Shown: positions 750 to 46,799 of the stretch, in pieces
Layout of the letters: each line of letters begins with the position of its first letter
Numbering within the stretch: position 1 is the first letter of the stretch
Source of the DNA: Convolutriloba macropyga
Lineage: Eukaryota
NCBI RefSeq assembly: GCF_964194025.1
Contig: NC_134468.1
Coordinates: forward strand, 75,206,001-75,270,000
Reading direction: 5' to 3'
Length of the DNA: 64,000 bases
Notes under the pieces: model-generated
The model's input: only the letters and a program-made list of their open reading frames with translations
What the model was told of the DNA's origin: nothing
Databases searched by the model: none
Made by a program: the position numbers and the translations under genes

Positions 750-2621
750 GAAGGTGATACTGTGTTGCTTTCTGCTTCCTTGTGTTTCAGAATGCCTGGA
801 AAAGACCTCAAGATTCTCTTCAGCGTTTTCTATTGCTCCATTTCTTGTATCAATCACGGTGTCGATTGGGTCCTTATCATCAGCCGATGTGGACGATACT
901 AACAATGTTTGGTTCCGACAATCCTTGATGTGCCCGTACTGCTTGATGAGGTTCCGATGATAACTCGTACTAATACTGAGGTCCTCAAACTGTTGAGCAC
1001 AATCTTCTCGCCTTATCATTCGAATCCATTCTATGTAGATTTTATCTAGTTTTACAACTAACTGTTCCACCTGATCAAACAATTTCTGTTTTAGGGATTC
1101 GCTGAATTTTTCTGTTTTCAACTTGCTCTTCAAATCTGATAGTTCAATCACAATTGGGTCAACAGCTTTCACTGATTAGTATGCTCAAAAATTTTGCTTC
1201 AACATCCAAAGAATTTTGTGCGGAAACTCCCAATGTCTCGGAGAAATGGTACTTTGTCAGCTACGCATCTCAAAAATTCACTCTCTTTTTCTAACATACG
1301 CTTGGTTTCTTTGTCGAAAGCTTCCAAATACTTTGGCTTTCCTGGTAACCTCTGTTGCCTTCTGTTGTCATTTAAACTGTCGTACGTCTTGAAGAAGAAT
1401 CGATGGGCACTTTTGGCTGTTATTGTTTTATTTTGTGTGAAGTAGCCTTCTAGCTCGCCGAGATGTCTGGAGAACGAATTGAATAGGTCAGCTTGCTCCT
1501 TCTCTAACGTCTTGATTTCACCACTCGTCTTCCAATCAGCTGTTCTCCAGTGTCTGGTGGTATTTTTTGACCATCGTTACCAGTTATGCTTTGGTCCACC
1601 TAATTGAAATGTTGAATCGTTGCTGTTCGTATCACTCTTGTTGTTGTGTGTCCGGTTCGGCAGACGAAATGCTGCGGCTGCTCAAGAGGCTTAGCGGAAC
1701 CAATTTATCACAGCCAGATCCTCAAGTTCTACGCCAGCTTGTTCTCCACTGAATCCCTTTGTCTAATGATCTCGCAGAAATAATTAGTTGCTCGGACGTA
1801 ATTAAAGGCCTGTAACTTTAATTTTGTTGATTGAAGTTAAGAAAATTTTGAGTGATAATCTATGTTCAACCTCGTGCTGAAATTTGTAATGCTTCAAACG
1901 GTAGCCAGTTTTGTTGCTAATCCTCATCAGGTAAACTCAACTAACATAAAACTTGCAAGATCTTGCAAATCTTAGCAAAAAACACTCAAACTGTTAACGA
2001 ATCAGATTTTAGTCTTATCTGAGAGCCAGCTGCTCGTGGTAACAGTTTCTAATGGTTCTAAATACAAAAAAATTTCACTATTTAAAAAATTAGTTGAAAG
2101 TAAAAAATCAAATTTTATTGCTACTTGTTTCTGATTGTTTAGTCAAGAAAACGATTTAGGTCATTGTTTACATAGTAAATGTCAAATTACTGCAATAGTT
2201 ACTATAATGGACATAAGAACGGGTGGTTATTACATTGCTCTAAATGCCTCAAATTTTCGGAATATAGCCTTTATTTAACACTTAAATTATCATGAAATAA
2301 ACAACTCAAGAAGTTTAACAATAAAAAACAAAGTATCAAAAAATGCCAATTTTGCACCATATAAGTACTAATAGCCCCACTCGTGGGTCTGATGCAACAA
2401 AAATTGCTGGATCCATGAGTAGCTCAGAAGTAAAACTAACCGTGTGCCAAAACCTCAGGTTATTCAGATTTTCCCTTCGAAAAAATGTGTACAAAATTTC
2501 GGCCCCAACTTTTTCAGTTTTGACCAATTTTGAGTTTTGACAAACATTAAGTTTTATCAGTTTCAAAAGTTATTTTTTGCTGTCTGATGGCTCTTTTTGC
2601 TGATTTAAGATGCCGCCGACA
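750..2621 (-). mobile_element. BEL/Pao fragment: LTR (1670-2621) + PBS (1651-1667) + 5' gag
   Basis: Reverse complement starts TGTCGGCGGC and matches 20944-22730; ORF 648..1172 is the gag N-terminal part. Confidence 0.8.
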
Positions 2622-3459
2622 CTAATATTGAACACCTAAGAAAGCGTAATACAGAAATTTGAATAATACTGAATAATACTCCCAAAGAAAGAGAATAATA
2701 CTCTTAAAGAAATATTACTGAATAATTTGAATAATTTTCTTAAAGAAAATTGGAAGAAAGCTAATAAAACAAGAAAATAATTTTTTGCACTTCATCTGCT
2801 CAATGCCGTTTGATGTGAGGCCACATGATGCAATTCGATTCGTTAAGTTCTTTGGTGATTAAGGGACGTTACTTTAACTGTTTTCTAATACCTGGTCAAT
2901 TAGAGTATCCTTTTCCAAAATCTGGCGATGTGGAAAAATTTGTATCTAAAAAAATTTCCTTTTCTCTGGCAATCGGAAAAAATTATTCTGAAAGCAAGAT
3001 TAGTCAGATGTCAAGTTACACAGATGAAAAGAACCTCTTTTCACTAACAGTCAGAATTCGATCCAAGACGAAATGGCAATTCAATCAAAACTGCTTGATT
3101 GAATGAAAACACAGAATTGAAGAGATTCTGAACTCATATGTTTCTAGCTAAAATTTTTGAGATAAATTAGTAAAAAAGGAGAAGCCGAGTATCAAACCTT
3201 GTTATGTCTCTGCATTTTCGTTGCCTGTAATAACTTGAGTTTTTTTTGTCCCATTCTGAGCTTACATTGTTTTACTGCGTCATCCAGTAATGAAACATAT
3301 TCTCATTTTTTCAAAATGTGCTCCTTCCTTGACCAATTTGGTTTTTAATTGCAGCTGAGTGGATAATTTCCTGCTTTTTTTCCTTGACCCAAGAGCTCTT
3401 TGTAACAGTTTCTATTGGATCTAAATATATTAATTGTAAACCACGCAATTGGTTAGCCG

Positions 3460-5272
3460 AAGGTAATACTGGGTTGCTTTATGCTTCCTTGTGTAGCAGA
3501 ATGCCTGTAAGAGACCTCAAGATACTCTTCTGCATTTTCTATTGCTCCATTTCTTGTATCAATCACGGTGTCGATTGGGTCTTTATCTTTAGCCGATGTG
3601 GATGATACTAACAATGTTTGGTTCCAACAATCCTTAATGTGCCCGTACTGCTTGATGAGGCTCCGATATTAACTCGTACTAATACTGAAGTCCTCAAGAT
3701 GTTGAGCACAATCTTCTCACTTCATCATTCGAATCCATTCTGTGTAGATTTTATCTAGTTTTACAACTAACTGTTCCACCTGATCAAACAATTTCTGTTT
3801 TCGGGATTCGCTGAATTTTTCTGTTTTGAACTTGCTCTTCAAATCTGATAGTTCAATCACAATTGGACAAGCAGCTTTCACTGATTAGTATGCTCAATAT
3901 GTATTTTTCCAACTTCCGAAGATTTCTGTGCAAAAATCCACAATTTATCGGAGAAATGTTATTTTGTCAAATACCCATCTCAAAAATTCACTCTTTTTTC
4001 TAACATACGCTTGGTTTATTTGTCGAAAGCTTCTAAATACTTTGGCTAGTAACCTCTGTTGCTTTCTGTTGTCTTCTAAAATGTTGTACGTCTCAAAGAA
4101 GAATCGATTGGCATTTTCGGCTGTCATTGAATTGTTTTGTGTCAGGTAGCCTCCTAGCTCGCTGAGGAGAACAAATTGAATAGGTCAGCCTGCTCCTTTT
4201 CTAACGTCTTGAGTTCACTCGTCTTCCAATCAACTGTTTTCCAGTGTCTGCTGGGACTTTTGGTGGCCAATGTTGCTAGTTGTGCTTTGGTCCACCTAAA
4301 TGAAATGACGAATCGTTGCTGTTAGTATCACTGTTGTTGATGTGTGTCCGGGTTGGCAGAACAAATGTTGTGGCTGATCAAGAATTTCAGCGGAACAGAT
4401 ATATCTCAGCCTGGTTCTTGCTTTTACGCCGGCGTGGTTCTTCACTGAATCTGATTGTCTAATGACCTCGCAGAAATATTTTGTTGCTCGGACGTATTTA
4501 AGGGACTGTAGGTTTTTTGATTGAAGTTAACAAAGTTCTCAGTGATAATCTATATTCAATCTCGTGCTGAAATTTGTAACAATTCAACCAGTAGCTAGTT
4601 TCGTTGCTTCTTTCTTTTCAAGTGAACTCAACTAACTTAAAACTCGCAAGATCCTAAGATATAGCAAAACTTAGCAAAAATGAACAAACTGTTAAAGAAT
4701 CAGGTTTACATTCAATCTGAGAGCCAACTACTCCTAGTAACAGCAGTTCTTAATGGTTCTAAATACAAATCAGTTTCACTGTTCAAACCATTGGGTTAGA
4801 GTAAGTAATCAAATAATTATCATTAATAACATTATCGCTACCTGTTTCTGATTGATTAATCAAGAAAGTGATTTAGGTCATTGTTTACATAGTAAATGTC
4901 AAATAACTGCAGTTTTTACGTTTATTGACTCAATCACGGATGAGTTTTACATGGCTCTAAGTGCCCCTTTTGTACGTTATTAAGAGTTTAATGGACACCT
5001 AAAGTATCATATAATTAACTGTTTCAGAAATTTAACAATTAATAACAAAATATCAAAAAAATAAGTGCTAATAGACACACTTGTGGTTCGGATGCAATAA
5101 TAATAGTTGGGTCCATGGGCACCTTAGGAGTAATGTTAACCATGTGCCATAACTTCGGGTTGCTCAGATTTTTGTTTCCAAAAATTGGGGCTTACGCAAA
5201 ATTTCGGTCTCAACTTGTAAAAATTTCTTGCAGTCTGATGGCTTTTTTTGCTGATTTTAAGTGCCGCCAGCA
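3460..5272 (-). mobile_element. BEL/Pao fragment: LTR (4366-5272) + PBS + 5' gag (tandem copy)
   Basis: Direct repeat of 750-2621 at ~2.7 kb period; mirror of 18368-20115. Confidence 0.8.
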
Positions 5273-7574
5273 ATACTAATGAACATCTAAGAAAACGTAA
5301 TACAGACAGTTAAAGAAATTTGACAGTTAAATATTTGCCCTTTTTCCGCTCATTGCCATTTGATGCAATGCCATATTATGCAATTCGATTTGCTGTTCGA
5401 AGTTCATTGGTGATTAGGGGAAATTACCTTATCTACTTTCTAGTATCTGGTCAATTAAAGTACCCTTTTCCAATAATTGGCGATGTTGAAAAATTTGTAT
5501 GTAAAAAAAATCCATTTTCTCTGGCAAGCAGAAAAAAATATTCTGAAGGCAAGATGAGTCACGTGTGGCCAAAGTGACCAAAAGTTACACAGATAAAAAA
5601 AACCTCGTTTCACTAACAGTCAAATTCAATCCCACACGAAATGGCATTTCAATCAAAACTGCTTGATTGAATGAAAACACATAATTGAAGAGATTCTGAA
5701 CTGATATGTTTCTAGCTAAAATCTTTGCGATAAAATTAATAAAAAAGGAGAAGCCCAGTATCAAACCTCGTTATTGCTCTTCATTTTCGTTGTCTGTAAT
5801 AACTTGAGTTTTCTGTCCCATTCCGAGCTTACATTGTTTTCATGCGTCATTCAGTAATGAAACATGTTCCCATTTTTTCAGAGTGTGCACATTCCTTAAC
5901 CAATTTGGTATTTAATTGCAGCTAGGTAGATAATTTCCTGGATTTTTCTGATTTTTATTGGATCTAAATATATTAATTGTAAACATTCAGTTTGTTAATT
6001 TTAATAAAATAGAATAACAAATACCATCGGCAATATACTGTTAATTCAACACTGATTGTTTGATTACAGAATATTTTCACAAAATGAATGTCAGGTAACT
6101 AACTACCGCAAAAACTTCAATAGCCTCGGTCAATGATCTTACCTGCGAGGCATTTGATTCATTGTATATATTACTGGACTACTATTAAACATCTAAGAGA
6201 GCAAAAAACAAACAGCGCAAGAAAGTTGATGGTAAACCAAATTAATATGACAAAAAATTGCACTATTTGTTTGCTAATAGCCACAATTAAGCCTGTGATG
6301 AATTTCGGTTCGGTAAGTTCACTGATGGTTACTTGATGGACGTTACACTAACCACTTTGCAATACCTGGTCGAATATTCCTCTCCGATTTTTGCGTTGTA
6401 AAAAAGTTTTTGTAAATAACTTCTATAAGGTTTTGGTTTTTTGCATTTTAAAAAATTCTTTGTTTTCATTGTGTGAGAACTCATTCCCAAATTCATTTCT
6501 TCATCGGTATAATCGCAGAAAACAAAAATTTGATGAAGACTCTTGTGATAGCAGTCTGTTATTTTCTTAGCTTGCACCACATAACTTTCAATTAGAGTGA
6601 AAGAAACACTCAGTCTTTTTTTACTCAATCTTTGTCATGTGTGAAACGAACACACAGACGAACAAAACCTCGATTCACTTGTAGTCTAAATGTACGTCAA
6701 ATCGATTTCCTATTTCAGTAAGAATTTCATGATTGAATGAACAAAACGCAGAATTGAAGACCTTTTAACGTCATATGTTTCTAGCAAAAATCTTTGAGAC
6801 AAATTTAAAAAAAGGAAAAGCCAATTACTGACCCTAGTTATCACTTTCTGGCTTCGTCGTCTGTAAAAATTTAGATGTTTTGTCCCATTTTAAAATTGCA
6901 TTGCTTCACTGTGTCATCTGGAATCCAAACATGTTCTCGTTTTTTCAAGGTGCGCACATTTTTTGACCAATTTTATCATTAATTGAAGTGGGGTAGACAA
7001 ATAAAGGTTTTTTCCGGAAAATGTCAGCTTTTTCTCGGGTCAATTTAAAGAGAATTTCATATTTTTAGAAGCATTCTTTTGTATGCAGTATGATTCATCA
7101 GTTTAACAGTTAACATTTCCAGTCGATTTGCATATTCATTTGGCATATGAAGTTTTGTTGAAACTGAAAAGGTAAGTTCGTGTTTCCATTGGTCTTAACG
7201 TTTTTTGCGCAAAATTTTGGCCAGCCCAATTTTTGTGCCAGTTTCCCTTAAGAGTAACATATGGACACAACCAGTAATGGATGTGCCAACAATGGCGTTG
7301 CAAACCCCTCGCATAATTTTTTAATTATGAAAAACCAATTACTCTACGTAGAACAAGTCATTTTTTCGACTGAATGCTTCAATTCAGGTGGATGAATTGA
7401 GTTTACTAAATTTATGATGTTGAACACCTGGATCGTTAATAATGGCCGTTTATGCTACTTGTTGCAAATTTTCCCTACAGTCTCTGCTGCTTAAAGTCAG
7501 AAGGTTAGAACGCAATAGCCATTTTTATCTTTCATTGTGTTTTCCAAAAGTTTTCAAAAGTGCATTGTTGTTTG

Positions 7575-7986
7575 GGTTCTACTTCATTTCACCCCTATTC
7601 ATTTAACCCCCTGTCATTTAACCCCGATTTATTCACCCCTCTATCATTTAACCCCGCTATCACTTCACCCCTCTATCATTTCATCCCGCTAATTAGCAGT
7701 CGACATTAAAGGCATGTTTTGTCATATTTAAGTGGATAGATTAATCCCACGTTCGGTTGTGATAGTTTCATATCAAGTCCCACGGGCCGCTGAGGCATGG
7801 CCATGGCCCGCGAGGCATGGCCAAATGATTTTATTGCTAATTTAATAATCCTTATTTTATAGGGATTAAAATCGGGGTGAAATGATAGTGGGGTTAAAAG
7901 ATAGAGGGGTTAAATGATACAGGGGTGAATAAATCGGGGTTAAATGATAGGGGGTTAAATGAATAGGGGTGAAAAAATGGGACACC
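7575..7986. mobile_element. MITE / foldback-type non-autonomous DNA transposon with repeat-built long TIRs and 8-bp TSD
   Basis: GTTGTTTG flanks both ends (7567-7574, 7987-7994). Left arm is tandem ATCATTTAACCCC/ATTTCACCCC units; right arm is their reverse complement. Confidence 0.85.
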
Positions 7987-8801
7987 GTTGTTTGATACTC
8001 TTTCGACTATGACCGTCTTATCTGTTGCTAAACACAGTACAGATGACGCGGGTATTTCAAACTCATTAGTCCAGTGTACCAAATTATGTTTTCCCTGTTT
8101 TCAGAGAAGAGGAGTTTTGTTCTTCTTTTGCCTTAATTCTGCTTTCTAATAGATGAACATTTTTCTTTACACAATCATTAGGTTTCTCAGTAAAGTTTAT
8201 TTTTTAACATGTTCTTCAACTGCTTGACAGAGAGACTTTTGCTGATTGTCCCCCTTGGAAGCAATCTGACTTCTTTGCTAAGAAAAACATTATTAGATAT
8301 CAATTTCAATAATTTGTTTTTGTACTGTGAAATTAAAAATATTACTGCTGTATCTTTTGCAGCTTCAATGTTACGTTTGCATTTACAAACATCTTGGCAT
8401 CTGCTTTTGTGAAAAAGAAATTTTCTCAAAGATTAATCTTGGGACATTAGTATTGTGGCCCGTTTGGCAACCTGTTACAATTAAGAGCTTACCTCTCACA
8501 AACTCTCTGATTATTTTCCTGTTAGCTTCTGTAAATTTTGGTCGACTCAAGTGGCCTGAACGCATTGTTCTTCTACTATTTCAAGATTCAAAAATGGAGC
8601 TAAAATTTCTGAGCTCCAGTTCTCTAAACTTTCGTTTTGTTTATCTATTTGCTAATACAGGGGTTCGTTTGCTGAGAAATTTGTGGCTTTTCGAACCATT
8701 CCCCAAAAGAATTTTCATTTCATGTATTCAGCTGTGTTGAGGTTGACAGGGAAAAGCTCAAAGTTTCAAGCTTCTACGTCTTTTGATAATTGACATTGCA
8801 A

Positions 8802-9923
8802 CCCAGGTTGAGGTGCCAGACTGAAAGTCGATATGTCCAGACTGTCCCAGACGGAAAGTGTCTATGTCCAGACCCTCCCAGACGGAAAGTGTCTATGTCC
8901 AGACTTTCGTGCGTTCAAAATTTTTCGTGCGTTCGTCGTGCGTACAAAACTCCCTATGTCCAGACTTTCGTGCGTTCAAAATCTTATATGACCAGACTTT
9001 AGTGCGTTCCAAATTAAAATTCGTGCGCTCATTTGTGCGTTCAAAAACACCTATGTCCAGACTTTCGTGCGTTCAAACGTGCTTATGTCCAGACTTTCGC
9101 GCGTTCAAAATCTTATATGACCAGACTTTAGTGCGTTCTAAATGAAAAATCGTGCGCTCATTTGTGCGTTCATGTCCAGACTATCGTGCGTTCAAAAACA
9201 CCTATGTCCAGACTTTCTTGCGTTCAAAAATGCGTATGTCCAGACTTTCGTGCGTTCATGTTCAGATAACGTTTTTATAATGTATTCGTTTCAAATATAG
9301 ATACGTTAGGGTGATGGTTGTGATGAAGTGCCCAAGCAGTTCCTACATTTTGTTTAATAAAAGATGTTCGATGAAAGTATTGGCTGAAGGGGCTGCCAGC
9401 GACCTAGTTATTAAAGTATGATTTGCTTTGCAACTTCAGCAAGGGTTTATAATTCTAGGTGTGAAATTGTTCTAAGCAAAGCAAAATGTTGGATGCGAAT
9501 TTTCCTGCGTTCGATGTTTTGTAACTTTTGAACTCAAGTGAGTTGAGGTTTTCTTGGTAGAAAGCTTTCTCTTGAGTGAGCACTCTATTAAGAGTGTTTA
9601 GTCAAACATGGATTCATTAGTTTTTGGCATTCTTGTTTCCATTCAAAAAATTTTCGTGCGCTCCGAGTCACAATGTCCAGACTTTCGTGCGTTCAAAATT
9701 GCTTATGTCCAGACTATCGTGCGTTCAAAATTGCATATGTCCAGACTATCGTGCGTTCAAAATTGCATATGTCCAGACTATCGTGCGTTCAAAATTGATT
9801 ATGTCCAGACTATCGTGCGTTCATTTTCTTTTCCAGACCGTGTAATTATGAACGCACGACGCCACCTTGTGCGTTCATTTTGGTCTGGACATATCGACTT
9901 TCGGTCTGGGACCTCAACCTGGG
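8802..9923. mobile_element. Non-autonomous DNA transposon, CCC...GGG termini, ~41-bp TIR, 2-bp TSD, internal ~31-bp tandem arrays (EnSpm/CACTA-like)
   Basis: CCCAGGTTGAGGTGCCAGACTGAAAGTCGATATGTCCAGAC ... GTCTGGACATATCGACTTTCGGTCTGGGACCTCAACCTGGG; AA on both sides; empty site at ~16935-16945; arrays of TATGTCCAGACT(T/A)TCGTGCGTTCAAAA at ~8870-9265 and ~9650-9825. Confidence 0.85.
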
Positions 9924-10181
9924 AAAGCTCTACTGTTGTTTCCTCGGACTCTTGAAATGACCCAAATTCTCCGTTCGTTTTTAAACACTTTTCATTTTTT
10001 GAATATAATATTTTTAAAACTTATTTGTGCTTTTCCCAACAGTTAGGGTGCTTATGTCATTTTTCTGGATGCATGACTGAGTCAGGTCACTTTGATGATC
10101 AATTTCAGATTCGATACCTCTTGAAACTTTGGCCCATTAAATAAAATCAGAAATTCATTAGTGTTTGTATCGGTTGTGCGG

Positions 10182-11149
10182 TCCGAGTTGCCGGACCAAT
10201 TGTTGCGGCTGCGCAAGAAGCTCAGAACCTCTGCAGTACCGAATATTCATAGCCATGTTCTTGAAATCTACGCCGGCCCATTTCTTCACTTCTGTTACTT
10301 CTACTAACGAACAATATTGTCGAAGATATCAGTCGCTCGGGTGTTTAAAAGGACTGTTAGTTTAGTTTTTTGAATTTAAGAACATCTGTAGTGATAACTA
10401 ATCATTGTTCTTATAGTGAAATTTGCACGGATTCAGCAACATGATAGAATTGTTGCTCAGAGCTTGCATAAAAACTGCACTAACTTTTAAACCTTGATGT
10501 TTTTAGATATAGCAAAAACATAACACAGTCAGTGGATTCTGAGAATCAAATTAAAGTCAAAATGAGCTCTCTGTAACAGTTTCTAATGTTTCTAAATATT
10601 TTGACTGTAAACTATTAAATCAAGTAAATTTAGGTAAAAAATTTCTAAAATAGCATCTTTGAAATAAATTTTACACATCAGTGATTGATTGATTACAGTT
10701 TATACTTACATAAAAATTTCAAATAACTGCCCCAAATACTTCAAGTGCTTCAATTTTCATCGTATCTGGGAGGCATTTGATTTTTTGGTATATTATGCCT
10801 TAGACTGTAGTTTAACAATGAAGAGAGCATAGAAAAAGTTCAAGAAAAATGGACAGTAAACCAATAAGAATGAAAGAACCCGTTTTTGCAGTAGATAATT
10901 GCTAATTGCTACACTTGTGCATATGATGCAAATCGGTTTGCTCTGTTTGTTGGTGGCTAGGAGGTTACTCTAACCATGTGCTCAAACAAGGTCGATCACA
11001 GTTTTTCATTCCAAAATTGGGCGATGTGCAAAACGTTTCATTCCAAACTTGTATTTTTTTTACTTTTTCTGTTTTCACCATTTCTTATGTTAATTTCTGG
11101 TGGTTCAAAATCTGTTCTTAAGATTTGTTCTTGAATAATGGCACCAACA
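10182..11149 (-). mobile_element. Second, diverged BEL/Pao-type LTR (10201-11149) + PBS-like site
   Basis: Reverse complement TGTTGGTGCC...GCAGCCGCAACA followed by TGGTCCGGCAACTCGGA; patchy homology to the family-1 LTR. Confidence 0.7.
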
Positions 11150-14100: not shown

Positions 14101-15700
14101 GAACTGATGATCGGCTTAAACGATATGGGGAAGATCAAACACAATCAAAATGATCTAAAAAATTATTTCAGTTAGAAATCCTTACACAAATTTCTGAGTA
14201 ACACTTTGAAATCACCACATTCTAACTGAAGTTCAATTTAAGGCATTGGTGAGGTCTCATAGCCGCTTTAACTGAAAATTGATCCATTCCTCTAGTTTAC
14301 TCTCGAGTTCAGCAATTTTCAGAACGAATATTTTTTCTGAAGGTGAATACTGCTGGAAAAAATCACTAAGTTTCTAAAACATAATAATGCAGATGCTTCT
14401 TTATCCTATTGTTTTTTGAACGCCTTGTTTCTTGAACACTTTTTTGGAAACGAAACTATGACAAATAAAGCAATGTTTGTCTGAAAAAAATTGAGACAAT
14501 CCACTAAAATAAAAATGACAATATCACCAGCTCAATAAAGACTTTAAGGTTCAATCATTGATGTAGGAAGCCGTTTTCTTTTGTCGTTTGACAATTTATA
14601 AGTGAGGACTTTCTGAATTGGAGAACTCTCAGAAGTCTGAACTGAACTCTGTTGGCCTGTAAAAACTGCTTTGCATTTTCTATGAGTTCGGTTAGCTAAA
14701 TGTTGATTCTTGTAGATAAACATTTTACATCACTGCTTGTGGGTATCTCAACTGTCTAAAAAAATCACTAAAACACAAACAATTTGTGCCAAATTGATTG
14801 AAGATTATTCAGGACATTAAAATTTTTTTGTTTTCCAAAGAATTACCAAAGATAATTATTTTATTCAATATATAAAAAACATTAATATAAATGATAAAAG
14901 CAGCCTTATAGTTAAGGTGCTCTCAAAAATAGACTAGTTTTTCTCAACGAACTGATGAGTTGGCTACCAATTATTATTTTTGGTGAGTATTTTTTGAGGA
15001 CTGATTTGATAATTATTTTAAACAGCTAACTAATGTTTGTATATTTTTTATGATCTAATCATTAAAGTTTTATTGTTTAATGCCGCACAGCGATAACTGG
15101 GGATAGTACTGGGTCTCTCTTTTTTTAAAATTCGTTGCATATATTCTTGCTAGAAACATGCAAGTTTAAAATCTCCAGTTCAGGTTGATCTACACCTACA
15201 CTCAACTATTAGTGAAAAGAGGTTCTGTTCATCTGCGTGATTTTTGGTAACACATGACTAACCTTGCTTTGATAAAAATTTTCCCCATTTCCAAAAGTGT
15301 TTTTACACTTATTCAATGAACAAACAGCAAGTGAGTGTGTGTCACTGTAACTGAAAAATTCCTTTTTAAAAATACTTTGTCAGCAAAATCTCTCAGGAAG
15401 GGAACTTTCTCTCGTCCTATATTTTTATCATCAGTTTTTGACTGCAGACATGACGTGCAAATGTATCCTGGTTACTTGACAGCCAGGTTTGCTTAATTGA
15501 ATCAGAGACAAGTGAATGAATAATCACAAAATTTTATGAGTAAAAATTGTAAAAAAAAACGAAAGAACAAAAAAAACATGCATCTCTTAGATTTTTGTTT
15601 ATCACAGGAGCATATTGAAACTGTTTCCTTTATAATCGTTATATAGGAGAAAACAGTTGCACTTATGAGTTTACTAAGCAGGATTCTGGCGACTTGTAAC

Positions 15701-16683
15701 TGTTGATGCCATTATTCAACAAAAAATCTTCGGAACAGATTTTGAACCACCAGAAATTAACATAAGAAATGGTGAAAATGGAAAAAAAATAAAAAAAATT
15801 ACAAGTTTGGAATGAATCTCTTTGCACATCACCCGATTTTGGAATGGGAAATTCTGATCGACCTCGTTTGAGCACATGGTTAGAGTAACCTCCTAGCCAC
15901 CAACAAACAGAACAAACCGATTTGCATCATATGCACAAGTGTAGCAATTAGCACTTATCAGGTGCAAAAACGGGTTCTTTCGTTTCTACTGGTTGACAGT
16001 CCATTTTTCCTAAGTTTTTTCTATGCTCTCTTAATTGTTTAATTACAGTCTAAGGCATAATATAAAAAAATTAAATGCCTCCCAGGTACGATCAAAGCTT
16101 GAAGCACTTGAAGGGTTTGGGGCAGATATTTGACTTTTTGATGTAAGTATAAACTGTATTCAATCAATCACTGATGAGAAAAATTTATTTGAAAGATGCT
16201 ATTTTAAAAATTTTTTACCTAATTTTACTTGATTTTATAGTTTACAGTCAAAGTATTTAGAACAATTAGAAACTGTGACAGAGCTCATGGCTCAAATTTT
16301 GACTTTAGTTTGATTCTCAGTATCCACTTTGATGTATATGTTATTGTTTTGTTATATCTAAAAAACCTCGAAGTTTAAAAATTAGTTCAGTTTTTATGCA
16401 AGCTCTAAGCAAAAATTCTATCATGTTGCTGAATCCCTGCAAATTTCTCTATAAGCACAATGATTAGTTATCACTATGGATGTTCTTAACTTCAAAAACC
16501 TAAACTAACAGACCTTTTAAACACTCAAGCGACTGATATCTTCGGCAATATTGTTCGTTAGTAGAAGTAACAGAATTGATGAAATGGGCCGGCGTAAATT
16601 TCAAGAACCTGGCTATGAATAATCGGTACTGCAGAGGTTCTGAGCTTCTTGCGCAGCCGCAACATATGATCCGGCAACGCGGA
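15701..16683 (+). mobile_element. Mirror copy of the family-2 LTR (15701-16664) + degenerate PBS
   Basis: TGTTGATGCC...GCAGCCGCAACA then TGATCCGGCAACGCGGA. Confidence 0.7.
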
Positions 16684-16699
16684 CCGCACAACCGATACA

Positions 16700-17627
16700 A
16701 ACACTAATGAATTTCTGATTTTATTTAATGTGCCAAAATTTCAAGAGGTATCGAATATCAAATTGATCATCAAAATGACCTGACTCAGTCATGCATCCAG
16801 AAAAGTGAAAAAGCGCCCTAACTGTCGGGAAAAGCACAAAGAAGTTTTAAAAATATTATATTCAAAAAATGAAAAGTATTTAAAAACGAACGGAGAATTT
16901 GGGTCATGTCAAGAGTCCGAGAACACAATAGTAGTGCTTCGCAATATCATTGGTCAAAAGACGTAGAAGCTTGAAACTTTGAGCTTTTCCTTGTCAACCT
17001 CAACACAGCTGAAGACATGAAATGAAAGTTCTTTTGGGGAATGGTTCGAAAAGCCACAAATTTCTCAGCAAACGAATAACTGTATTAGCAATTAGATAAA
17101 CAAAACGCAAGTTTAGAGAACTGGAGCTTAGAAATTTTCTGCAATTTTGAGTTTTGAAATAGTAGAAGGACAATGCGTTCAGGTCACTTGAGTCAAGCTG
17201 AAATATACAGAAGCTAACAGGAAATTAAGCAGAGAATTTGTGAGAGGTAAGCTCTTAATTGTAACCGGTTGCCAAACGGCCACAATACTAATGTCCCAAG
17301 ATTAGTCTTTGAGAAAAATTCTGTTTCATAGAAGCAGATGCCAAGATGTTTGGAAATGCAAACGTAACAGAAGCTGCAAAAGATACAGCAGTAATTTTTT
17401 TAGTTTCGCAGTAAAATTTCAGAGTAAAGTGTTGCAATTGATCTCTAATAATGTTTTTCTTAGCAAAGAAGTCAGATTTCTTCCAAGGGGGCAAATGAGC
17501 AAAAGTCTCTCTGTCAAGCAGTTGAAGAACATGCTAAAAAATAAACTTTACTGAGAAAACTATTGATTGTGTAAGGAAGAAAGGTCATCTATTAGAAAGC
17601 AGAATTAAAGCAAAAGAAGAACAAAAA
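16700..17627 (+). mobile_element. LINE-like (ORF1 region) remnant, mirror of 8115-10130 without the EnSpm-like insertion
   Basis: Homologous to 28500-29010. Confidence 0.45.
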
Positions 17628-18367
17628 TTACCATGTTGCCGATGGTAACTTTTATTCTATTTTATTAAAATTAACAAATTGAATGGTTTACAATTAATAT
17701 ATTTAGATCCAATAAAAACCAGAAAAATCCAGGAAATTATCTACCCAGCTGCTATTAAATCCCAAATTGGTTAAGGAATGTGTACATTCTGAAAAAATGA
17801 GAACATGTTTCATTACTGGATGACGCAGTAAAACAATGTAAGCTCAGAATGGGGCAAAAAACTCAAGTTATTACAGGCAACCAAAATGTAGAGCAATAAC
17901 GAGGTTTGATACTAGGCTTCTCCTTTTTTATTAATTTTATCGCAAATATTTTGGCTAGAAAACATATGAGTTCAGAATCTCTTCAATTCTGTGTTTTCAT
18001 TCAATCAAGCAGTTTTGATTGAAATGCCATTTCGTCTTGCATTGAATTTGACTGTTAGTGAAACGAGGTTTTTTTCATCTGTGTAACTTTTGGTCACTTT
18101 GGTCACACGTGACTCACCTTGGCTTCAGAATAAATTTTTCTGCTTGACAGAGAAAAAGAATTTTTTTTCGATAAAAATTTTTCCACATCGCCAGAAAAGG
18201 GATACTTTAATTGACCAGGTACTAGAAAGTAGCTAAGGTAACTTCCCCTAATCACCAATGAACTTAGCAAATCGAATTGCATAATATGGCATTGCATCAA
18301 ATGGCAATGAGCAGATAAAGGGCGAAAATTTACCCTGTATTACTCTTTCTTAGATGTTCAATAGTAG

Positions 18368-20115
18368 TGTTGGCGGCACGTAAAATCAACAAAAAGAGCC
18401 ATCAGACAGCAAGAAATTTGAAACCGAAATTTTGCGCAACCCCCGATTTTTGGGAATCACAAACCTGAGCAATCCAAAGTCATGGCACACAGTTAAAATT
18501 ACCTCTAAGGTGCTCATGAACCCGACGATTATTTTGGCATCAGACCCACAAGTGTGGCTAACAGCACTTATGTTTTTTGATATTTTGATATTAATTGTTA
18601 AATTTCTGAAATTATTAGTTTCATGATACTTTAGGTGTTCATTAAATGCTTAATACCGTACAATAGAGGTACTTACAGCCACTTACAAATCATCCGTGCT
18701 TGTGTCAATAAATGTAAAAATTGCAGTAATTTGACATTTACTATGTAAAAAATGACAAAAATCACTTTCTTGTTTAATCAATCAGAAACAATTAAGGATG
18801 ATGTTATGAATGATAATTATTTGATTATTTACTCTGAACCAATAGTTTGAACAGTGAACCTCTTAGATTCTTTAACAGTTTGGTCATTTTTGCTAAGTTT
18901 TGCTATATCTTAAGATCTTGCGAGTTTTAAGTAAGTTGAGTTCACTTGAAAAGAAGTTAGTAACGAATATAGCTAGTGGTTGAATCGTTACAATTTTCAG
19001 CACAAGATTGAAAATAGGCTATCACTGAGAACTTTCTTAACTTCAATCTGCAAAGCTACAGTCCTTTAAATACGTCCGAGCAACTAAATATTTCTGCGAG
19101 GTCATTAGACAATCGGATTCAGTGAAGAACCACGCTGGCGTAAAACTCGAGAAACAGGCTGAGATATATCGGTTCAGCTGAGATTCATGAGCAGCCCAAA
19201 CATTTGGTCTGCCGACCCGGACACAAAACAAAAAGAGTGATACTAACAGCAACGATTCATCATTTCAAATAGGTGGACCAAAGCATAACTAGTAACATTG
19301 CCAAGCAAAAGCAGACACTGGAAAACAGTTGATTGGAAGATCAGTGAACTCAAGACGTTAAAAATGAGCAAGTTGAACTACTCAAATTGTTCTCCAGACA
19401 CCTCATTGAGCTAGGAGGCTACCTGACATAAAACAATTCAATGACAGCCGAAAGTCCCAATCGATTTTTCTTTGAGACGTACGACATTTTAGAAGACAAC
19501 AGAAAGCCACAGAGGTTACTATTCATACCAAAGTATTTAGAAGCTTTCGAGAAAGAGACCCAGCATATACTAGAAAAAAAGAGTGAATTTTTGAGATGAG
19601 TGGTTGACAAAGTACCATTTCTCCGAGACATTGGGAGTTTCCAAATAAAAAGCTTGGGATGTTGAAAAAACTTTTTGAGCATACTAATCAGTGAAAGCTG
19701 TTGAACCAATTGTGATTGAAGTATCAGATTTGAAGAGCAAGTTGAAAACAGAAAAATTCAGCCAATCCGAAAAACAAAAATTGTGTGATCAGGTGGAACA
19801 GTTAGTTGTAAAACTAGATAAAATCTACACAGAATGGATTCGAATGATGAAGCGAGAAGATTGTTCACAACAGTTTGAGGACCTCAGTGTTAGTAGGAGT
19901 TATTATCGGAACCTCATCACGCACTACGAGCACAGCAAGGATTGTCGGAACCAAACATCGTTAGTATCATCCACATCGGCCGATGATAAGGACCCGATCG
20001 ACACCGTGATTGATACAGGAAAGTGAGCAATAGAAAACATTGAAGAGAATCTTGACGTCTCTTCCAGGCATTCTGCTACACGAGGAAGCAAAAAGCAACC
20101 CAGTATCACCTTTGG
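18368..20115 (+). mobile_element. BEL/Pao fragment: LTR (18368-19202) + PBS (19205-19221) + 5' gag
   Basis: TGTTGGCGGC...AAACA TT TGGTCTGCCGACCCGGA; ORF 19691..20026 is a gag piece. Confidence 0.82.
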
Positions 20116-21930
20116 CTAACCAATTGCATGGTTTACAATCAATAAATTTAGATCCAATAGAAACTGTTACAAAGAGATCTTGTGTCAAGGAAAAAAAGCG
20201 GGAAATTGTCCACTCAATTGCAATTAAAGACCAAATTGGTCAAAGAATGTGCACATTTTGAAAAATTCAGAAAATTTTTCATCACTGGATGACGAAGTAA
20301 AACAATGTAAGCTCAGAATGGGACAAAAAAGTTATTACAGGCAACAAAAATGCAGAGCAATAACGAGGTTTGATACTGGGCTTCTCCTTTTTTTAAATTT
20401 TATTGCAAAGATTTTAGCTAGAAACATATGAATTCAGAATCTCTTCAATTCTGTGTTTTCATTCAATCAAGCAGTTTTGATTGAAATGCAAATTCGTCTT
20501 GTATCAAATTTTGACTTTTAGTGAAACGAGGTTCTTTTCATCTGTGTAACTTGACATCTGACTAATCTAGCTTTCAGAATAATTTTTTCTGATTGCCAGA
20601 GGAAATAAAATTTTTTTAGACACAAATTTTTCCACATCGCCAGAATTTGGAAAAAGGTACTCTAATTGACCAGGTATTAGAAAAAAGTTAAATTATTGTC
20701 CCCTAATCACCAATGAACTTAACTAATCGAACTGCATCATATGGCATTGCATCAGGTGGCATTGATCAGATAAAGTGCAAAAAATTATTTTCTTATTTTA
20801 TTGGTTTTCTTTCAATTTTTTTTAAGAGTATTATTCAAATTATTCAGTATTATTTCTTTAAGAGTATTATTCTCTTTCTTTGGGAGTATTATTCAATATT
20901 ATTCAAATTTCTCTATTACGCTTTCTTAAATGTTCAATATTGGTGTCGGCGGCACTTTAAATCAGCAAAAGGAGCCATCACATAGCAGGAAACAAATTTT
21001 GAAACTAATAAAAATTAAAATTGTCGAAACTCAAAAATGGTCAAAACTGAAAGAGTTGGGGCCGAAATTGTGTACACCCCTTCAATTTTTGGAAAGGAAA
21101 GCCTGAATAACCCAAAGTTTTGGCACACGGTTAGTTTTTCTTCTCAGCTACTCATGGACCCATTGCAATTTGTTGCATCAGACCCACAAGTGTGGCGAGT
21201 AGTTTTTATATGGTGCAACATTGGTATTTGTTTGATACTTTGTTATTTATAGTTAATTTTCTTAAGTTGTTTAATTTATGATAATTTAAGTGTTCATTAA
21301 AGGCTATATACCGTGAATATGAGGCATTTAAAGCCACGTAATAACCATCCGTTCGTATGTCCATAATAATAGTAACTATTGCAGTAAGTTGACATTTACT
21401 ATGTAAACAATGACCTAAATCGTTTTCTTGACTAAACAATCAGATATAAGTAGCAATACAAATAAAAATGACAAATATTTGATTTTTTACTTTAACTCAA
21501 TTGTTTGAATAATGAAAATATATTGTATTTAGAACCGTTAGAAACTGTTACTACGAGCAGCTGCCTCTCTGATTAGACTAAAATTTGATTCTTCAACAAT
21601 TTTATTGTTTTTTGCTAAGTTTTGCAAGGTCTTAGGATCAAACGAGTTTTAATTAGTTGAGTTTATTTGATGAGAGTTAGCAACAAAACTAGCTACTGGT
21701 TGAAGCGTTACAAAGTTCAGCACGAGATTGAACATAGATTATCACTGAGGACTTTCTTAACTTCAATCAACAAAACTAAAGTTACAGTCCTTTAATTACG
21801 TCCGAGCAACTAATTATTTCTGCGATATCTTTAGACCAAGGGATTGAGTGAAGAACCAGGCTGGCGTAGAACCTGAGATCCAGGCTGTGATATATCGGTT
21901 CCGCTGAGCTTCTTGAAAAGCCTCAATATT

Positions 21931-21947
21931 TGGTCGGCCGACCCGGA
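21931..21947 (+). promoter_or_regulatory. Primer-binding site of the BEL/Pao element (tRNA-Tyr-like)
   Basis: TGGTCGGCCGACCCGGA 2 nt after the LTR end; resembles the BEL-type TGGTCCTTCGAGCCGGA PBS. tRNA identity is inferred. Confidence 0.6.
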
Positions 21948-23569
21948 CACACAATTAAAAGAGTGATACAAACAGCAACGATTCATCATATCAATTAGGT
22001 CGACCAAAGCATAGCTAGTAACCTTGGCCAGCAAAAGTCCCAGCAGACACTGGAAAACAGTTGGTTGGAAGACCAGTGAACTCAAGACGTTAGAAAAGGA
22101 GCAGGCGATTCTTCTTCAAGATGTACGACAGTTTAGATGACAACAGAAAGCAACATAGGTTACCATTAAAACCAACGTTTTTAGAAGCTTACGACAATGA
22201 CACCAAGCGTATTTCAGATAAAAAGAGTAAATTTTGGAGATTGGTAGTTGAAGAAATACCTTTTCTCCAAAACAGAAATCTTTGGATGTTGGAAAAACAC
22301 ATATTGAGCATACTAATCAGTGAAAGCTGCTTGTTCAGTTGTGATTGATTTATCAGATATGGAGAAGAAGTTGAAAACAGAAAACTTCAGCGACTCCGCG
22401 AAACAGATATTGTGTGATCAGATGGAACAGTTAGCTGTAAAACTAGATAAAATCTAAGCAGATTAGATTGGAGTGATGAAGCGAGAAGATTGCCCAAGTG
22501 TTTGAGGACCTCAGTAATATCAAGAGTTACTATCGGAACCTGATCAAGCAGTACGGGAACAGCAAGGATTGTTGGAACCAAACATAGTTAGTATCATCCA
22601 CATCGGTTGGTGATAAGAAACTAATAGAAACTGTGATTGAAACAGGAAATGGAGCAATAGAAAACGCTGAAGAGAACCTTAAGGTCTCTTCCAGGCATTC
22701 TGCTACACACGGAAGAAAAAAGCACCACCTTCGGCGACAGATAGACGAAATGGAGCTCGGAAACCTAAGAGCTAAAAATAAAACAGTGCAACGACTGCGA
22801 GAACGACAGTTGGAGTTAGAGCAGGAGCGTGAGGAAAAAGAACTTCAGCAAAGAAATGGAACGTCAGTAAGAAGAAATACGTTTCCAACAACAACAACCA
22901 CAGCAACCACAACAACAACAAAACAGCAGCAGCAAAACAGCGGGAACCACGTCTAAAGATGCAACAACAAGAAGACAAACTGAGTCTTCGACAGCATGAG
23001 CGACCCCTTGAAAACGACAGAGAGAAAGCAGAGGCCGACAAATAACAAAGACATCTGGAACATGAGCTGACCAAAGGAAACTCAAGGACATCTGGACCAG
23101 TGGCAGATTAGATAAAAAGTGTTGGATCAAGACGCAGTCAAGGAAGAACAACCGGGTGGCAAGAATCAGTGGCTCAACAGTCTGTCCCTAGACGGCCACT
23201 ATGTTCAAACGTTGTTATCGACCCTCCAACGAACGTCACATAGGGAAGAGTTGACAACCGTTTCAGCACCTACCCAAAAACTACCCCACTTCCAAACGCG
23301 TGAAGGATTTTTCTCAACGCAGCCGAGAGAATGGAGCATTTTCAAGAAACAAGAAATCTGTAAATCAATTACAACTACGGACCCACCAGCACCGTTAAAA
23401 AGGACGACGTTTCAGCAGCAAGAGCAGTCCAAGAAAAAAACAGGACTCAGAGTCCCATTAACAACTCTCGAAACAGGTCTGACGAGAGAAAAGACAGGAG
23501 CACATGGAACCAAACCATTCCGCAAGTCAATGACCAACCAGTACCAAGCAGTGGTGCCAGTGGCTTGCC

Positions 23570-27290: not shown

Positions 27291-27709
27291 GATGGTATTT
27301 CTGAGACCGAAAACAGGACCGGCAATGTTGACGCTTCATCAAATCAGCAATAAGAGCCGTCAGAAAACAAAAACTGATGAAATTTAGAATTTGTCAAAAC
27401 TCAAAAATGGTCAAAACTGAAAAAGTTGGGACTGAATTTTTGTACACCTCCCGATTTTGGAAGAGAAAACCTGAGCAACTCGAAGTTATGGCACACAATT
27501 AGAATTAATTCAAAACTACTCATGGACTCAAGGATTTTAATTGCATAAGACCCACAAGTGTGGCTATATACATATATTGTGCAAAGTAGCACTTTTTGAT
27601 ATTTTGTTATTTACTGTTTAATTTCTTAAATTTAAACTGTTCTCACAAGATTCTTCATCAAATTTTTGTTTTTTTGCAAATAATCCAGGGAATTCATTAA
27701 TTCAAGACA

Positions 27710-36330: not shown

Positions 36331-36399
36331 TAGTGAAAGAGTACCTCCATTGCCTCAGCCACTTAAACCTATAAGGCAGTTACTTGACATTTCTGTCTT

Positions 36400-46751: not shown

Positions 46752-46799
<48 letters not shown>

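What the first reader, a model, noticed from the sequence alone, without database searches (positions are those of the whole stretch)
760..22730. ~22 kb imperfect palindrome made entirely of TE debris
Seen: ~760-12720 and 13605-22730 are colinear reverse complements around a ~0.9 kb spacer, visibly diverged (roughly one difference per 8-10 nt, by eye). Arm-specific events order the history: the EnSpm-like insertion 8802-9923 is left only; 6040-8110 is absent on the right; 13730-14280 and a ~135 bp piece at ~15315-15448 are right only. Inference: an old inverted segmental duplication. Long inverted repeats with short spacers are usually unstable, so its survival is notable. Read-through transcription would give multi-kb dsRNA against Pao and LINE families.
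Basis: partly seen in the sequence, partly recalled or inferred. Interest (0 to 1): 0.7.

Follow-up and report, generated by a model that had tools for sequence, protein, structure and literature searches.

The report
Old giant mirror-image DNA duplication
A stretch of this worm chromosome was long ago copied backwards beside itself; the mirror repeat is real and at least three times larger than first noted, but it is decaying repeat-rich DNA with no sign of a function.

Summary
The arms 762-12720 and 13608-22728 are colinear reverse complements: 8,232 aligned pairs, 87.9% identity, K2P 0.13, around an 887-bp spacer.

It is only the core of a larger structure. Inverted homology of the same age (K2P 0.07-0.15) continues to window 43509 on the right. 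On the left it continues about 28.8 kb upstream of the window. The span is about 72 kb, or 82 kb counting a later tandem copy. All these blocks have matches of 85% or more only in the partner arm, so this is a locus-specific inverted segmental duplication, not a transposon.

A repeat copy runs unbroken across the right spacer border, so 12720/12721 is the novel joint.

The arms diverged without arm-to-arm gene conversion. Later events include transposon insertions, deletions and tandem duplications. A younger 19-kb palindrome with a 126-bp spacer lies upstream.

"Entirely TE debris" is only partly right. "Notable survival" is not supported by published data on spacers and divergence. The hairpin-RNA idea is untested and looks weak. 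Earlier scan notes report other large palindromes elsewhere in this genome.

The parts
1..12720 (.). Left arm, the part inside the window. It continues upstream to about G000:C1:75177175 (window -28825), or to 75167610 (window -38390) if a later 9.6-kb tandem copy is counted.
12721..13607 (.). Spacer of 887 bp, single copy. Its right part (13267-13607) belongs to a repeat copy that runs on into the right arm.
13608..43509 (.). Right arm at full extent, 29.9 kb.
13267..13679 (+). A copy of a high-copy dispersed repeat. Other copies share the 3' end and have variable 5' ends, which is the pattern of non-LTR (LINE-like) elements. It crosses the 13607/13608 border unbroken, so that border is not a joint.
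   Evidence: 1,948 first-look candidates; 7 of 7 fetched copies align across the border
12586..12720 (-). Innermost left-arm block. It mirrors the last 72 nt of that repeat copy plus 63 nt of its flank, and is cut off at 12720. 12720/12721 is therefore the novel joint of the duplication.
762..2640 (-). Bel-Pao-family LTR copy, left unit 1. It mirrors 20900-22728. Its outer third was converted from the neighbouring left unit.
3460..5260 (-). Bel-Pao-family LTR copy, left unit 2. It mirrors 18340-20115.
18340..20115 (+). Bel-Pao-family LTR copy, right unit 1.
20900..22728 (+). Bel-Pao-family LTR copy, right unit 2. On this arm it is followed by a Pao internal region.
2740..3455 (.). L piece, a 0.7-kb locus-specific sequence that alternates with the LTR copies to form the 2.7-kb tandem unit. 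Other copies are at 126-741, 5271-6036, 17633-18332, 20117-20825, 33508-34210 and 35571-36296.
6037..8108 (.). Left-only 2,072 bp, most likely deleted from the right arm. It contains an internal pair of inverted 16/30-nt repeat arrays (7584-7691 and 7869-7974).
8802..9923 (.). Young non-autonomous TIR DNA transposon of 1,122 bp. It has 42-bp TIRs, 32-nt subterminal repeats and a 2-bp target duplication (AA). It was inserted in the left arm after the duplication.
13743..14286 (.). Right-only 544 bp, with no match of E <= 0.001 elsewhere in the assembly. The left arm has an unrelated 50 bp in its place (12536-12585).
15315..15448 (.). Right-only 134 bp, single copy in the assembly. Two alleles are seen in the read contigs.
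22730..28237 (+). Degraded Bel-Pao internal region (DUF1759 gag domain, Peptidase_A17, weak rve) plus a partial LTR.
28238..33146 (.). Block b. It matches left-arm blocks at -3306..-7299 with K2P 0.11-0.15. In the colinear reading it is a right-arm paralogue of b'.
33147..36394 (.). Block a. It mirrors window -428..-3133 with K2P 0.09-0.13.
36406..37953 (.). Block b'. It mirrors window -9577..-11381, and also the tandem twin at -5491..-7299, with K2P 0.09-0.10.
37950..43509 (.). Block Q, the outermost shared block. It mirrors window -23585..-28825 with K2P 0.07-0.13. Mirror homology ends at 43509.

Best explanation
This is an ancient, locus-specific inverted segmental duplication of about 30 kb. 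It probably arose in one event that copied the sequence now at 13608-43509 in reverse orientation to the left of what is now the spacer.

The asymmetric 887-bp spacer is continuous with the right arm. The single novel joint is at 12720/12721. This fits two origins. One is fold-back priming or template switching after a break, with the spacer as the loop. The other is a central deletion in a once-perfect palindrome.

The duplicated segment already held a tandem array of 2.7-kb units (a Bel-Pao-family LTR plus a local 0.7-kb piece) and other old repeat fragments.

Since then the arms have drifted apart as neutral DNA to about 89% identity, with no arm-to-arm gene conversion. The later events were:
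- exchange between neighbouring units within an arm;
- a young TIR transposon (left arm) and a 5.6-kb transposon family (left arm);
- deletions;
- presence or absence of a Pao internal region (right arm only);
- 4.1-kb and 9.6-kb tandem duplications (left arm).

Shown: the structure, its two-copy status, the relative order of events, and which spacer border is the joint. Inferred: the formation mechanism and the lack of function.
For: Structure and divergence:
- Block-wise K2P is 0.07-0.18 in the core and 0.07-0.15 in the outer blocks. In total 20,847 aligned bases have 89.2% identity.

Two-copy status:
- Matches of 85% or more occur only in the partner arm. Dispersed copies are 79% or less.

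The joint:
- A LINE-like repeat copy at 13267-13679 crosses 13607/13608 intact in 7 of 7 compared family copies. The left arm holds only its last 72 nt.

Order of events:
- In the first two thirds of the LTR, mirrored pairs are the closest (0.85-0.89, against 0.75-0.85 for other pairs). The tandem array therefore predates the inversion.
- In the last third, left unit 1 is closest to left unit 2 (0.902), not to its mirror (0.834). This shows exchange within the arm and explains the 81% outer block.

Later events:
- The young TIR element has 42-bp TIRs, a 2-bp TSD, and an empty site on the other arm.
- The left-only 11 kb belongs to a younger 5.6-kb family, with copies elsewhere at 82-92%.
- Tandem duplications have K2P 0.02-0.03.

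Reality of the sequence:
- Both arms, the spacer and the arm-private pieces are present in read contigs of 4 runs from 3 samples.
- There are no N runs between window -77000 and +124000.

Literature:
- The spacer length lies inside the 766-70,466 bp range of sequenced human fold-back duplications (PMC3907307).
Against: - No long reads could be laid, so the adjacency and orientation of the arms rest on the assembly.
- The read contigs are short unitigs. None of the contigs listed bridges 12720/12721, and most laid contigs were not shown.
- Left-arm contigs sit at roughly 0.55-0.75 of spacer depth in three of the four runs (X1-X3). This is unexplained.
- No microhomology is visible at the joint. 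After 12% divergence that is uninformative.
- Outside the core, the block order is a-b on the left and b-a-b' on the right. A single event needs at least one extra arm-specific duplication or deletion.
- Lack of function is an absence of evidence. No RNA data exist here.
Confidence: 0.75

Rival explanations
1. The palindrome, or the wider repeat graveyard around it, is a small-RNA source locus. It would act as a piRNA cluster or a long hairpin-RNA gene whose read-through transcript feeds transposon silencing. This would add a function to the same structure rather than replace the structural reading.
For: - It is a repeat-rich region of tens of kb that has accepted young transposon insertions.
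- The arms carry Bel-Pao LTR and LINE-like fragments.
- AT skew has opposite sign in the two arms. That is what mirror-image arms give, and it would also fit repeats lying mostly in one orientation per arm.
- Long inverted repeats are known sources of hairpin RNA (LIRBase, PMC8728187, listed).
Against: - No RNA run is on record as holding the stretch.
- Arm complementarity is only 88-89%. Perfect duplex runs of 21 nt or more number 76 and cover 2.3 of 8.2 kb.
- The repeat fragments in the arms are 67-79% identical to their dispersed families.
- Only 108 of about 21,950 core 21-mers occur in a younger Pao copy.
- The one young element sits in one arm only, so it would not be double-stranded.
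- No Rfam family or tRNA was found.
Confidence: 0.15
2. It is an assembly artefact: two diverged haplotypes of one locus, or a chimeric fold-back long read, joined head to head.
For: - Only short unitigs were available, so long-range order is unverified.
- Left-arm contigs have lower depth than the spacer.
- An earlier scan note on another palindrome of this genome raised the same worry.
Against: - The arms differ by 11-12% and by kb-scale private transposon insertions. That is far more than read error or ordinary heterozygosity.
- Mirror homology stops at -28825 and 43509, with unrelated flanks and no gap. It does not run to a contig end.
- Both arms occur in all three samples. The right arm carries two alleles of its own, and left-arm variants appear in other samples.
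- The right spacer border is a natural continuation of a repeat copy.
Confidence: 0.06
3. It is one very large mobile element with long terminal inverted repeats, of the foldback or snap-back type, rather than a chromosomal duplication.
For: Earlier scan notes describe a palindromic Maverick-like element family elsewhere in this genome. Palindromic structure alone is compatible with this.
Against: - No second copy of any arm block at 80% or more lies outside this locus.
- The arms are a mosaic of unrelated older repeats and local sequence.
- No transposase, polymerase or integrase ORF belongs to the whole structure. The only protein domains found belong to a degraded Bel-Pao.
Confidence: 0.02

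Closest known systems
Fold-back inverted duplications with a single-copy spacer (human germline cases, Hermetz et al. 2014, PMC3907307)
   Same: Two inverted copies flank a short non-duplicated spacer. Here the spacer is 887 bp, and the published range is 766-70,466 bp. One spacer border is a novel joint and the other is the natural sequence.
   Different: - The human cases are recent, lie at chromosome ends, and come with deletions.
- This one is interstitial, fixed or at least common in three samples, and about 12% diverged.
- Junction microhomology can no longer be read.
- The mechanism is inferred, not shown.
Large palindromic segmental duplications of mammalian genomes (sex-chromosome amplicons, from my own knowledge; mouse chr12 SD12A1, PMC13688818)
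   Same: Arms of tens of kb with a spacer, embedded in a region with further tandem and inverted duplications.
   Different: Sex-chromosome palindromes are kept above 99.9% identity by arm-to-arm gene conversion and carry testis genes (my own knowledge). Here identity is 89%, conversion is seen only between neighbouring units within an arm, and no gene lies in the arms.
Long inverted repeats as hairpin-RNA or siRNA sources (LIRBase, PMC8728187) and transposon-graveyard piRNA clusters
   Same: A long inverted repeat built partly from transposon fragments, in a region that accumulates insertions.
   Different: Expression and small RNAs are untested. The arms are too diverged to give long perfect dsRNA, and too diverged from the live families to give many perfectly matching small RNAs.
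Fragile inverted Alu repeats in yeast (Lobachev laboratory; Ait Saada et al. 2023, PMC10164571)
   Same: The same class of DNA structure, an inverted repeat with a spacer.
   Different: Fragility there needs spacers of about 12-100 bp and high identity. Raising the spacer from 12 to 100 bp lowers recombination 300-fold, and 75% homology abolishes instability in duplex DNA. This locus has 887 bp and 88-89% identity, so it is expected to be fairly stable.

Membership tests
Inverted segmental duplication (palindrome with spacer) | Two colinear arms in reverse-complement orientation | tested here: met
   There is a single anti-diagonal chain with 8,232 aligned pairs at 87.9% in the core. Across all blocks, 20,847 aligned bases have 89.2% identity.
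Inverted segmental duplication (palindrome with spacer) | Locus-specific: the arm sequence as a whole exists only twice in the genome | tested here: met
   Whole-genome searches find matches of 85% or more only in the partner arm. Dispersed matches are 79% or less and cover only the repeat fragments.
Inverted segmental duplication (palindrome with spacer) | The arms pre-date their private insertions and share older nested repeats in the same order | tested here: met
   The tandem LTR+L units are mirrored pairwise. A young TIR element has an empty site on the other arm.
Inverted segmental duplication (palindrome with spacer) | The structure is supported by molecules that span the centre | not testable with these tools
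   Only short unitigs of 4 runs were available. They show that all parts are present but not their long-range order.
Fold-back origin | Short inverted microhomology between the spacer end and the start of the duplicated segment | tested here: inconclusive
   No match is visible at 12721 against 13607, but 12% divergence has erased any 2-8 bp signal.
Conversion-maintained ampliconic palindrome | Arm identity above 99% through ongoing arm-to-arm gene conversion | tested here: not met
   Identity is 82-93% in every 400-nt window but one, which falls to 76% in an indel-rich stretch. No window is near-identical. Heterogeneity is significant (chi-square 119.7, 19 d.f.), but it traces to exchange within an arm.
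Foldback or long-TIR transposon | Multiple genomic copies with common termini and target-site duplications | tested here: not met
   No other copy exists.
Hairpin-RNA (endo-siRNA) locus | Highly complementary arms that can form long dsRNA | tested here: not met
   There are 76 perfect runs of 21 nt or more, covering 2,297 of 8,232 aligned bases. The longest run is 67 nt.
Hairpin-RNA (endo-siRNA) locus / piRNA cluster | Transcription across the locus and small RNAs of the expected size classes | not testable with these tools
Bel-Pao LTR retrotransposon (for the repeat units and the right-only insert) | Pao-type gag and pol domains, and LTRs shared with dispersed copies | tested here: met
   - DUF1759 has E 8.8e-07 and Peptidase_A17 has E 1.3e-13. 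The rve hit is weak.
- The internal region 22112-27329 aligns at about 74-87% to another copy, whose flanking repeat equals the 1.8-kb unit piece.
- There are at least 2,001 first-look candidates for that piece.

The most novel reading that the evidence does not exclude
This chromosome region is a recurrent palindrome-forming hotspot. Inverted duplications of different ages arose within about 120 kb: K2P about 0.12 with an 887-bp spacer, and K2P 0.046 with a 126-bp spacer. Tandem duplications with K2P 0.01-0.03 lie among them, and a satellite array of at least 40 kb is next to them. Together with the other giant palindromes noted in this genome, this could reflect a lineage-specific bias toward fold-back repair. 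Alternatively, the locus could serve as a hairpin or piRNA-type small-RNA source in this animal's germline or stem cells.
Probability: 0.15. Interest if true: 0.55.

Novelty: new member of a known kind. Interest (0 to 1): 0.3.

Why it matters
On its own it is an ordinary if large example of an old inverted segmental duplication in repeat-rich DNA. It has three uses.

1. It is a dated, internally ordered record of how such a structure decays. There is no arm-to-arm conversion. There is exchange within an arm between tandem units, and there are private insertions, deletions and tandem duplications.
2. With the younger 126-bp-spacer palindrome 62 kb away and other large palindromes noted in this genome, it raises a testable question. 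Does this lineage make or tolerate palindromes unusually often?
3. It is a caution for annotation and assembly. The visible 22-kb palindrome was only the inner third of the structure.

Tried and rejected
- **Innermost block as transposon TIRs.** I considered that the 135-bp block and the spacer form a TIR transposon sitting in the centre. I rejected this because the block is the tail of a LINE-like copy plus its flank, duplicated with the arm.
- **Read "joints" at the centre.** Contigs joined 13670 to 12659 through a 31-nt quasi-palindrome, which might have been an alternative centre allele. I rejected this. The 31-mer occurs once in the assembly, on another chromosome, inside an unrelated 356-bp hairpin that shares only 20-29 nt with this locus. 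The two other joints (12774>13582, 12779>13650) rest on 21-24 nt sides and were not pursued.
- **Second version of 15315-15448.** A second contig version in the reads has no second locus in the assembly, so it is allelic.
- **L as part of the Pao element.** The L piece gave no meaningful match to the compared Pao copy.
- **Pfam on other ORF pieces.** None scored above threshold. I therefore make no claim about LINE or Penelope coding remnants, or about a transposon orientation bias.
- **RNA genes.** Rfam and tRNA scans of the window found nothing.
- **Identity gradient.** Identity does not fall smoothly from the centre outward. The array part has 87.6% and the inner part 88.5% (p = 0.27). The variation is patchy.
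- **Protein atlas.** The look-up of the 805-codon ORF was uninformative.
- **Literature on this group.** A paper search for piRNA or transposon work on acoels gave nothing usable.
Full report
**Coordinates.** The window is G000:C1:75206001-75270000, plus strand, on an 89.3-Mb contig of a 1.18-Gb assembly. Window position w equals C1 position 75,206,000 + w. Negative window positions lie upstream of the window and were fetched as loci L015-L023. Earlier scan notes call the organism an acoel worm. I did not verify that.

**1.

Self-BLAST, a fine comparison of the centre and a global alignment of the left arm against the reverse complement of the right arm give one anti-diagonal chain. It runs from 762/22728 to 12720/13608.

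The alignment has 8,232 aligned pairs at 87.9% identity. Transitions and transversions number 489 and 507, K2P is 0.13, and there are 58 small indels.

The spacer is 12721-13607 (887 bp).

- Left-only: 6037-8108 and 8800-9923.
- Right-only: 13743-14286 and 15315-15448.
- Two further small left-only pieces: 1402-1490 and 4705-4770.

The window has no N, and GC is about 36%.

**2. It is a two-copy, locus-specific duplication.**

A whole-genome search with 9925-13607 finds the partner arm at 82-93% identity. Everything else is 72% or less, namely short dispersed repeat fragments. No long ORF lies in the arms, and there is no Rfam family or tRNA.

**3. What the arms are made of.**

The outer 5.3 kb of each core arm is about two tandem units of 2.7 kb (127-2511 against 2820-5216, 84-87% identity). 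Each unit has two parts.
- **A 1.8-kb piece.** It has at least 2,001 dispersed candidate copies. The 36 longest of the copies scored are 76-77% identical and share the same ends. In another copy on contig C2963 this piece flanks an internal region that aligns to window 22112-27329 at about 74-87%.
- **A 0.7-kb piece, L.** It is absent from that element and occurs only at this locus.

Window 22730-27300 carries Bel-Pao protein domains: DUF1759 (E 8.8e-07), Peptidase_A17 (E 1.3e-13) and a weak rve hit. The 1.8-kb piece is therefore a Bel-Pao-family LTR.

The inner arm holds fragments of other old dispersed families, for example 10173-10598 at 67-68% identity, together with low-copy sequence. "Entirely TE debris" is thus only partly right.

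**4. The palindrome is much larger than reported.**

I compared 90 kb upstream and 60 kb downstream with the window. Inverted homology continues in blocks, listed here from the core outward:

| Left block (window) | Right block (window) | Name | K2P |
|---|---|---|---|
| -428..-3133 | 33147-36394 | a | 0.09-0.13 |
| -3306..-7299 | 28238-32262 | b | 0.11-0.15 |
| -9577..-11381 | 36406-37953 | b' | 0.09-0.10 |
| -23585..-28825 | 37950-43509 | Q | 0.07-0.13 |

These values lie in the same range as the core, 0.07-0.18. Over all blocks, 20,847 aligned bases have 89.2% identity.

Whole-genome searches with b, a/b' and Q find matches of 85% or more only in the partner arm. Dispersed copies are 79% or less.

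The right arm is therefore 13608-43509 (29.9 kb). The left arm runs from 12720 to about -28825 (41.5 kb). The whole structure spans about 72 kb, or 82 kb if a later tandem copy of Q at -38390..-34811 is counted.

The right arm has the internal region there, and the left arm has another L piece.

The block order is a-b on the left and b-a-b' on the right. The arms become colinear under two assumptions:
- 22730-33146 (the Pao internal region plus a paralogue of b) is right-specific.
- The extra left material is left-specific.

That extra left material has three parts:
- One more L piece plus a partial LTR.
- A 4.08-kb tandem twin (K2P 0.02).
- An 11-kb stretch of a younger 5.6-kb family, whose copies elsewhere are 82-92% identical.

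This colinear reading is an inference. At least one extra arm-specific event is needed.

**5. Which border is the joint.**

A dispersed repeat covers 13267-13679. Its other copies share the 3' end and have variable 5' ends, a pattern typical of non-LTR elements. All seven copies I fetched align straight across 13607/13608.

The left arm contains only the mirror of the last 72 nt of that copy, plus 63 nt of its flank (12586-12720). So the spacer and the right arm are the ancestral continuous sequence, and 12720/12721 is the novel joint.

Two origins fit:
- Fold-back or template-switch copying, with the spacer as the loop.
- A one-sided central deletion in an initially perfect palindrome.

I cannot tell them apart. 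No microhomology is visible at the joint, but 12% divergence makes that uninformative.

The spacer length lies within the 766-70,466 bp range of sequenced human fold-back duplications (PMC3907307).

**6. Order of events.**

*The tandem array came first.* In the first two thirds of the LTR, the mirrored pairs are the closest relatives: right unit 1 with left unit 2 at 0.85-0.89, and right unit 2 with left unit 1 at 0.86-0.87. All other pairs score 0.75-0.85. The tandem array therefore existed before the inversion.

*Exchange within the left arm came later.* In the last third of the LTR, left unit 1 is closest to left unit 2 (0.902) and to right unit 1 (0.895), not to its mirror (0.834). This shows exchange between neighbouring units within the left arm after the duplication. 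It also explains why the outermost core block is only 81% identical.

*The identity profile is patchy.* Identity varies significantly along the arms (chi-square 119.7, 19 d.f.). There is no centre-to-edge gradient: the array part has 87.6% and the inner part 88.5% (p = 0.27). No window is near-identical. I therefore see no arm-to-arm gene conversion.

*Private events.*
- **8802-9923** is a young non-autonomous TIR transposon of 1,122 bp. It has 42-bp TIRs and 32-nt subterminal repeats. Its 2-bp target duplication is seen here (AA) and in 8 of 8 other copies (TA, TT, CT). At least 40 copies are 90-98% identical. The empty site is preserved on the right arm. The superfamily was not determined.
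- **6037-8108** is more likely a right-arm deletion. The left sequence continues colinearly with other local copies of the L-containing repeat.
- **13743-14286** has no match of E <= 0.001 elsewhere in the assembly.
- **15315-15448** is single-copy in the assembly.

*Absolute age.* K2P of about 0.12 means roughly 0.06 substitutions per site per arm. Under assumed neutral rates of 1e-9 to 1e-8 per site per year, this gives about 6-60 million years. The rate is my assumption, not a measurement.

**7. Is the sequence real?**

Contigs of four public runs from three samples, all of one study, cover all 30 bins of 10900-16800. Many contigs are identical to the left arm, the spacer, the right-only 544-bp piece and the right arm. 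Sample-specific variants appear in both arms.

The contigs are short unitigs, so they show presence and not long-range order. None of the contigs listed bridges 12720/12721, and most laid contigs were not shown.

Several facts argue against a haplotype misjoin or a chimeric read:
- Divergence is 11-12%, and the arms have kb-scale private insertions.
- The flanks beyond -28825 and 43509 are unrelated.
- No gap lies between -77000 and +124000.
- Both arms occur in all three samples.

One observation stays unexplained. Left-arm contigs have about 0.55-0.75 of the spacer's k-mer depth in three of the four runs, X1-X3. Heterozygosity for the left arm is possible.

**8. Stability and the dsRNA idea.**

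The yeast work summarised in PMC10164571 gives these figures:
- Raising the spacer from 12 to 100 bp lowers repeat-induced recombination about 300-fold.
- A 1.5-kb spacer lowers gross rearrangements about 31-fold.
- Lowering homology to 75% abolishes instability in duplex DNA.

With 887 bp and 88-89% identity, this locus is not expected to be fragile now. At birth it already had a long spacer. Its survival is therefore not remarkable.

A read-through transcript would fold imperfectly. Only 76 perfect runs of 21 nt or more exist, covering 2,297 of 8,232 aligned bases. The count rises to 107 with G-U pairs.

Its products would rarely match live elements. Only 108 of about 21,950 core 21-mers occur in the younger Pao copy. 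No RNA run is on record as holding the stretch. The small-RNA reading stays possible but unsupported.

**9. Context.**

- A second, younger palindrome lies upstream. Its arms are -58941..-49328 and -49201..-39541, with BLAST identity of 93.7% counting gaps. Aligned bases are 95.5% identical, giving K2P 0.046. The spacer is 126 bp.
- Part of its right arm, together with block Q, was later duplicated in tandem. The unit is 9.6 kb and K2P is about 0.03.
- A 3.8-kb unit is repeated three times at 99% further upstream.
- An array of a roughly 210-bp satellite, at least 40 kb long, starts 84 kb downstream of the window start.
- Earlier notes of this scan report other large palindromes in the same genome.

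The locus therefore looks like a duplication-prone, satellite-adjacent repeat region.

**Verdict.** The structural interpretation is supported. The "notable survival" and dsRNA ideas are not. It is a new member of a known kind, of modest interest.

Noticed in passing
G000:C1:75147059-75166459 (window -58941..-39541; loci L021-L023): A second, younger palindrome lies 62 kb upstream. Its arms are about 9.6 kb each. BLAST identity is 93.7% and aligned bases are 95.5% identical (K2P 0.046). The spacer is only 126 bp (window -49327..-49202). By the spacer and identity criteria it is a better candidate for a fragile structure than the finding itself.
   Followed up: partly
G000:C1:75161609-75180872 (window -44391..-25128): A 9.6-kb tandem duplication at 96-97% identity. 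It copies the outer block Q of the big palindrome's left arm together with part of the second palindrome's right arm. It is therefore later than both.
   Followed up: partly
G000:C1:75182842-75193808 (window -23158..-12192; L015, L017): A left-arm-only 11 kb made of a younger, high-copy 5.6-kb repeat family. There are 5,890 first-look candidates, with copies elsewhere at 82-92%. The stretch is itself tandemly duplicated at 96%. The family was not classified.
   Followed up: partly
G000:C1:75136406-75147770 (window -69594..-58230): Three tandem copies of a 3.79-kb unit at about 99% identity, just outside the second palindrome.
   Followed up: no
G000:C1:75290154 to beyond 75330000 (84 kb to more than 124 kb downstream of the window start; L026-L029): A satellite array of at least 40 kb. 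The monomer is about 210 bp, with stronger 420- and 840-bp periodicity. No inverted matches occur inside it.
   Followed up: no
window 46721-49135 (+) and 49541-50149 (+): An 805-codon stop-free frame, rich in Q, N, S and P and probably disordered, has no Pfam family. It is followed by a 203-codon frame with a sub-threshold EST1 hit. GC is higher here (0.40-0.42). This may be exons of a host gene about 3 kb beyond the right arm's outer end.
   Followed up: partly
window 7584-7691 and 7869-7974: Two short arrays of 16/30-nt repeats that are reverse complements of each other, forming a small hairpin inside the left-only 2-kb piece.
   Followed up: no
window 52613-56099: A tandem duplication with a 1,733-bp period at 81% identity, in a stretch with strongly negative AT skew.
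   Followed up: no
window 10900-16800 (read contigs): Left-arm contigs have about 0.55-0.75 of the k-mer depth of the spacer contigs in three of the four runs (X1-X3). The right-only 134-bp piece 15315-15448 has two alleles that differ at 7 sites. The locus is heterozygous and possibly structurally polymorphic.
   Followed up: partly
L046 (G000:C9:34466649-34469679), positions 1342-1697: An unrelated 356-bp imperfect hairpin (81% self-complementary) with a 31-nt quasi-palindromic centre. It shares 20-29 nt with the repeat tail at the palindrome's centre. It caused spurious joints when the reads were laid.
   Followed up: yes
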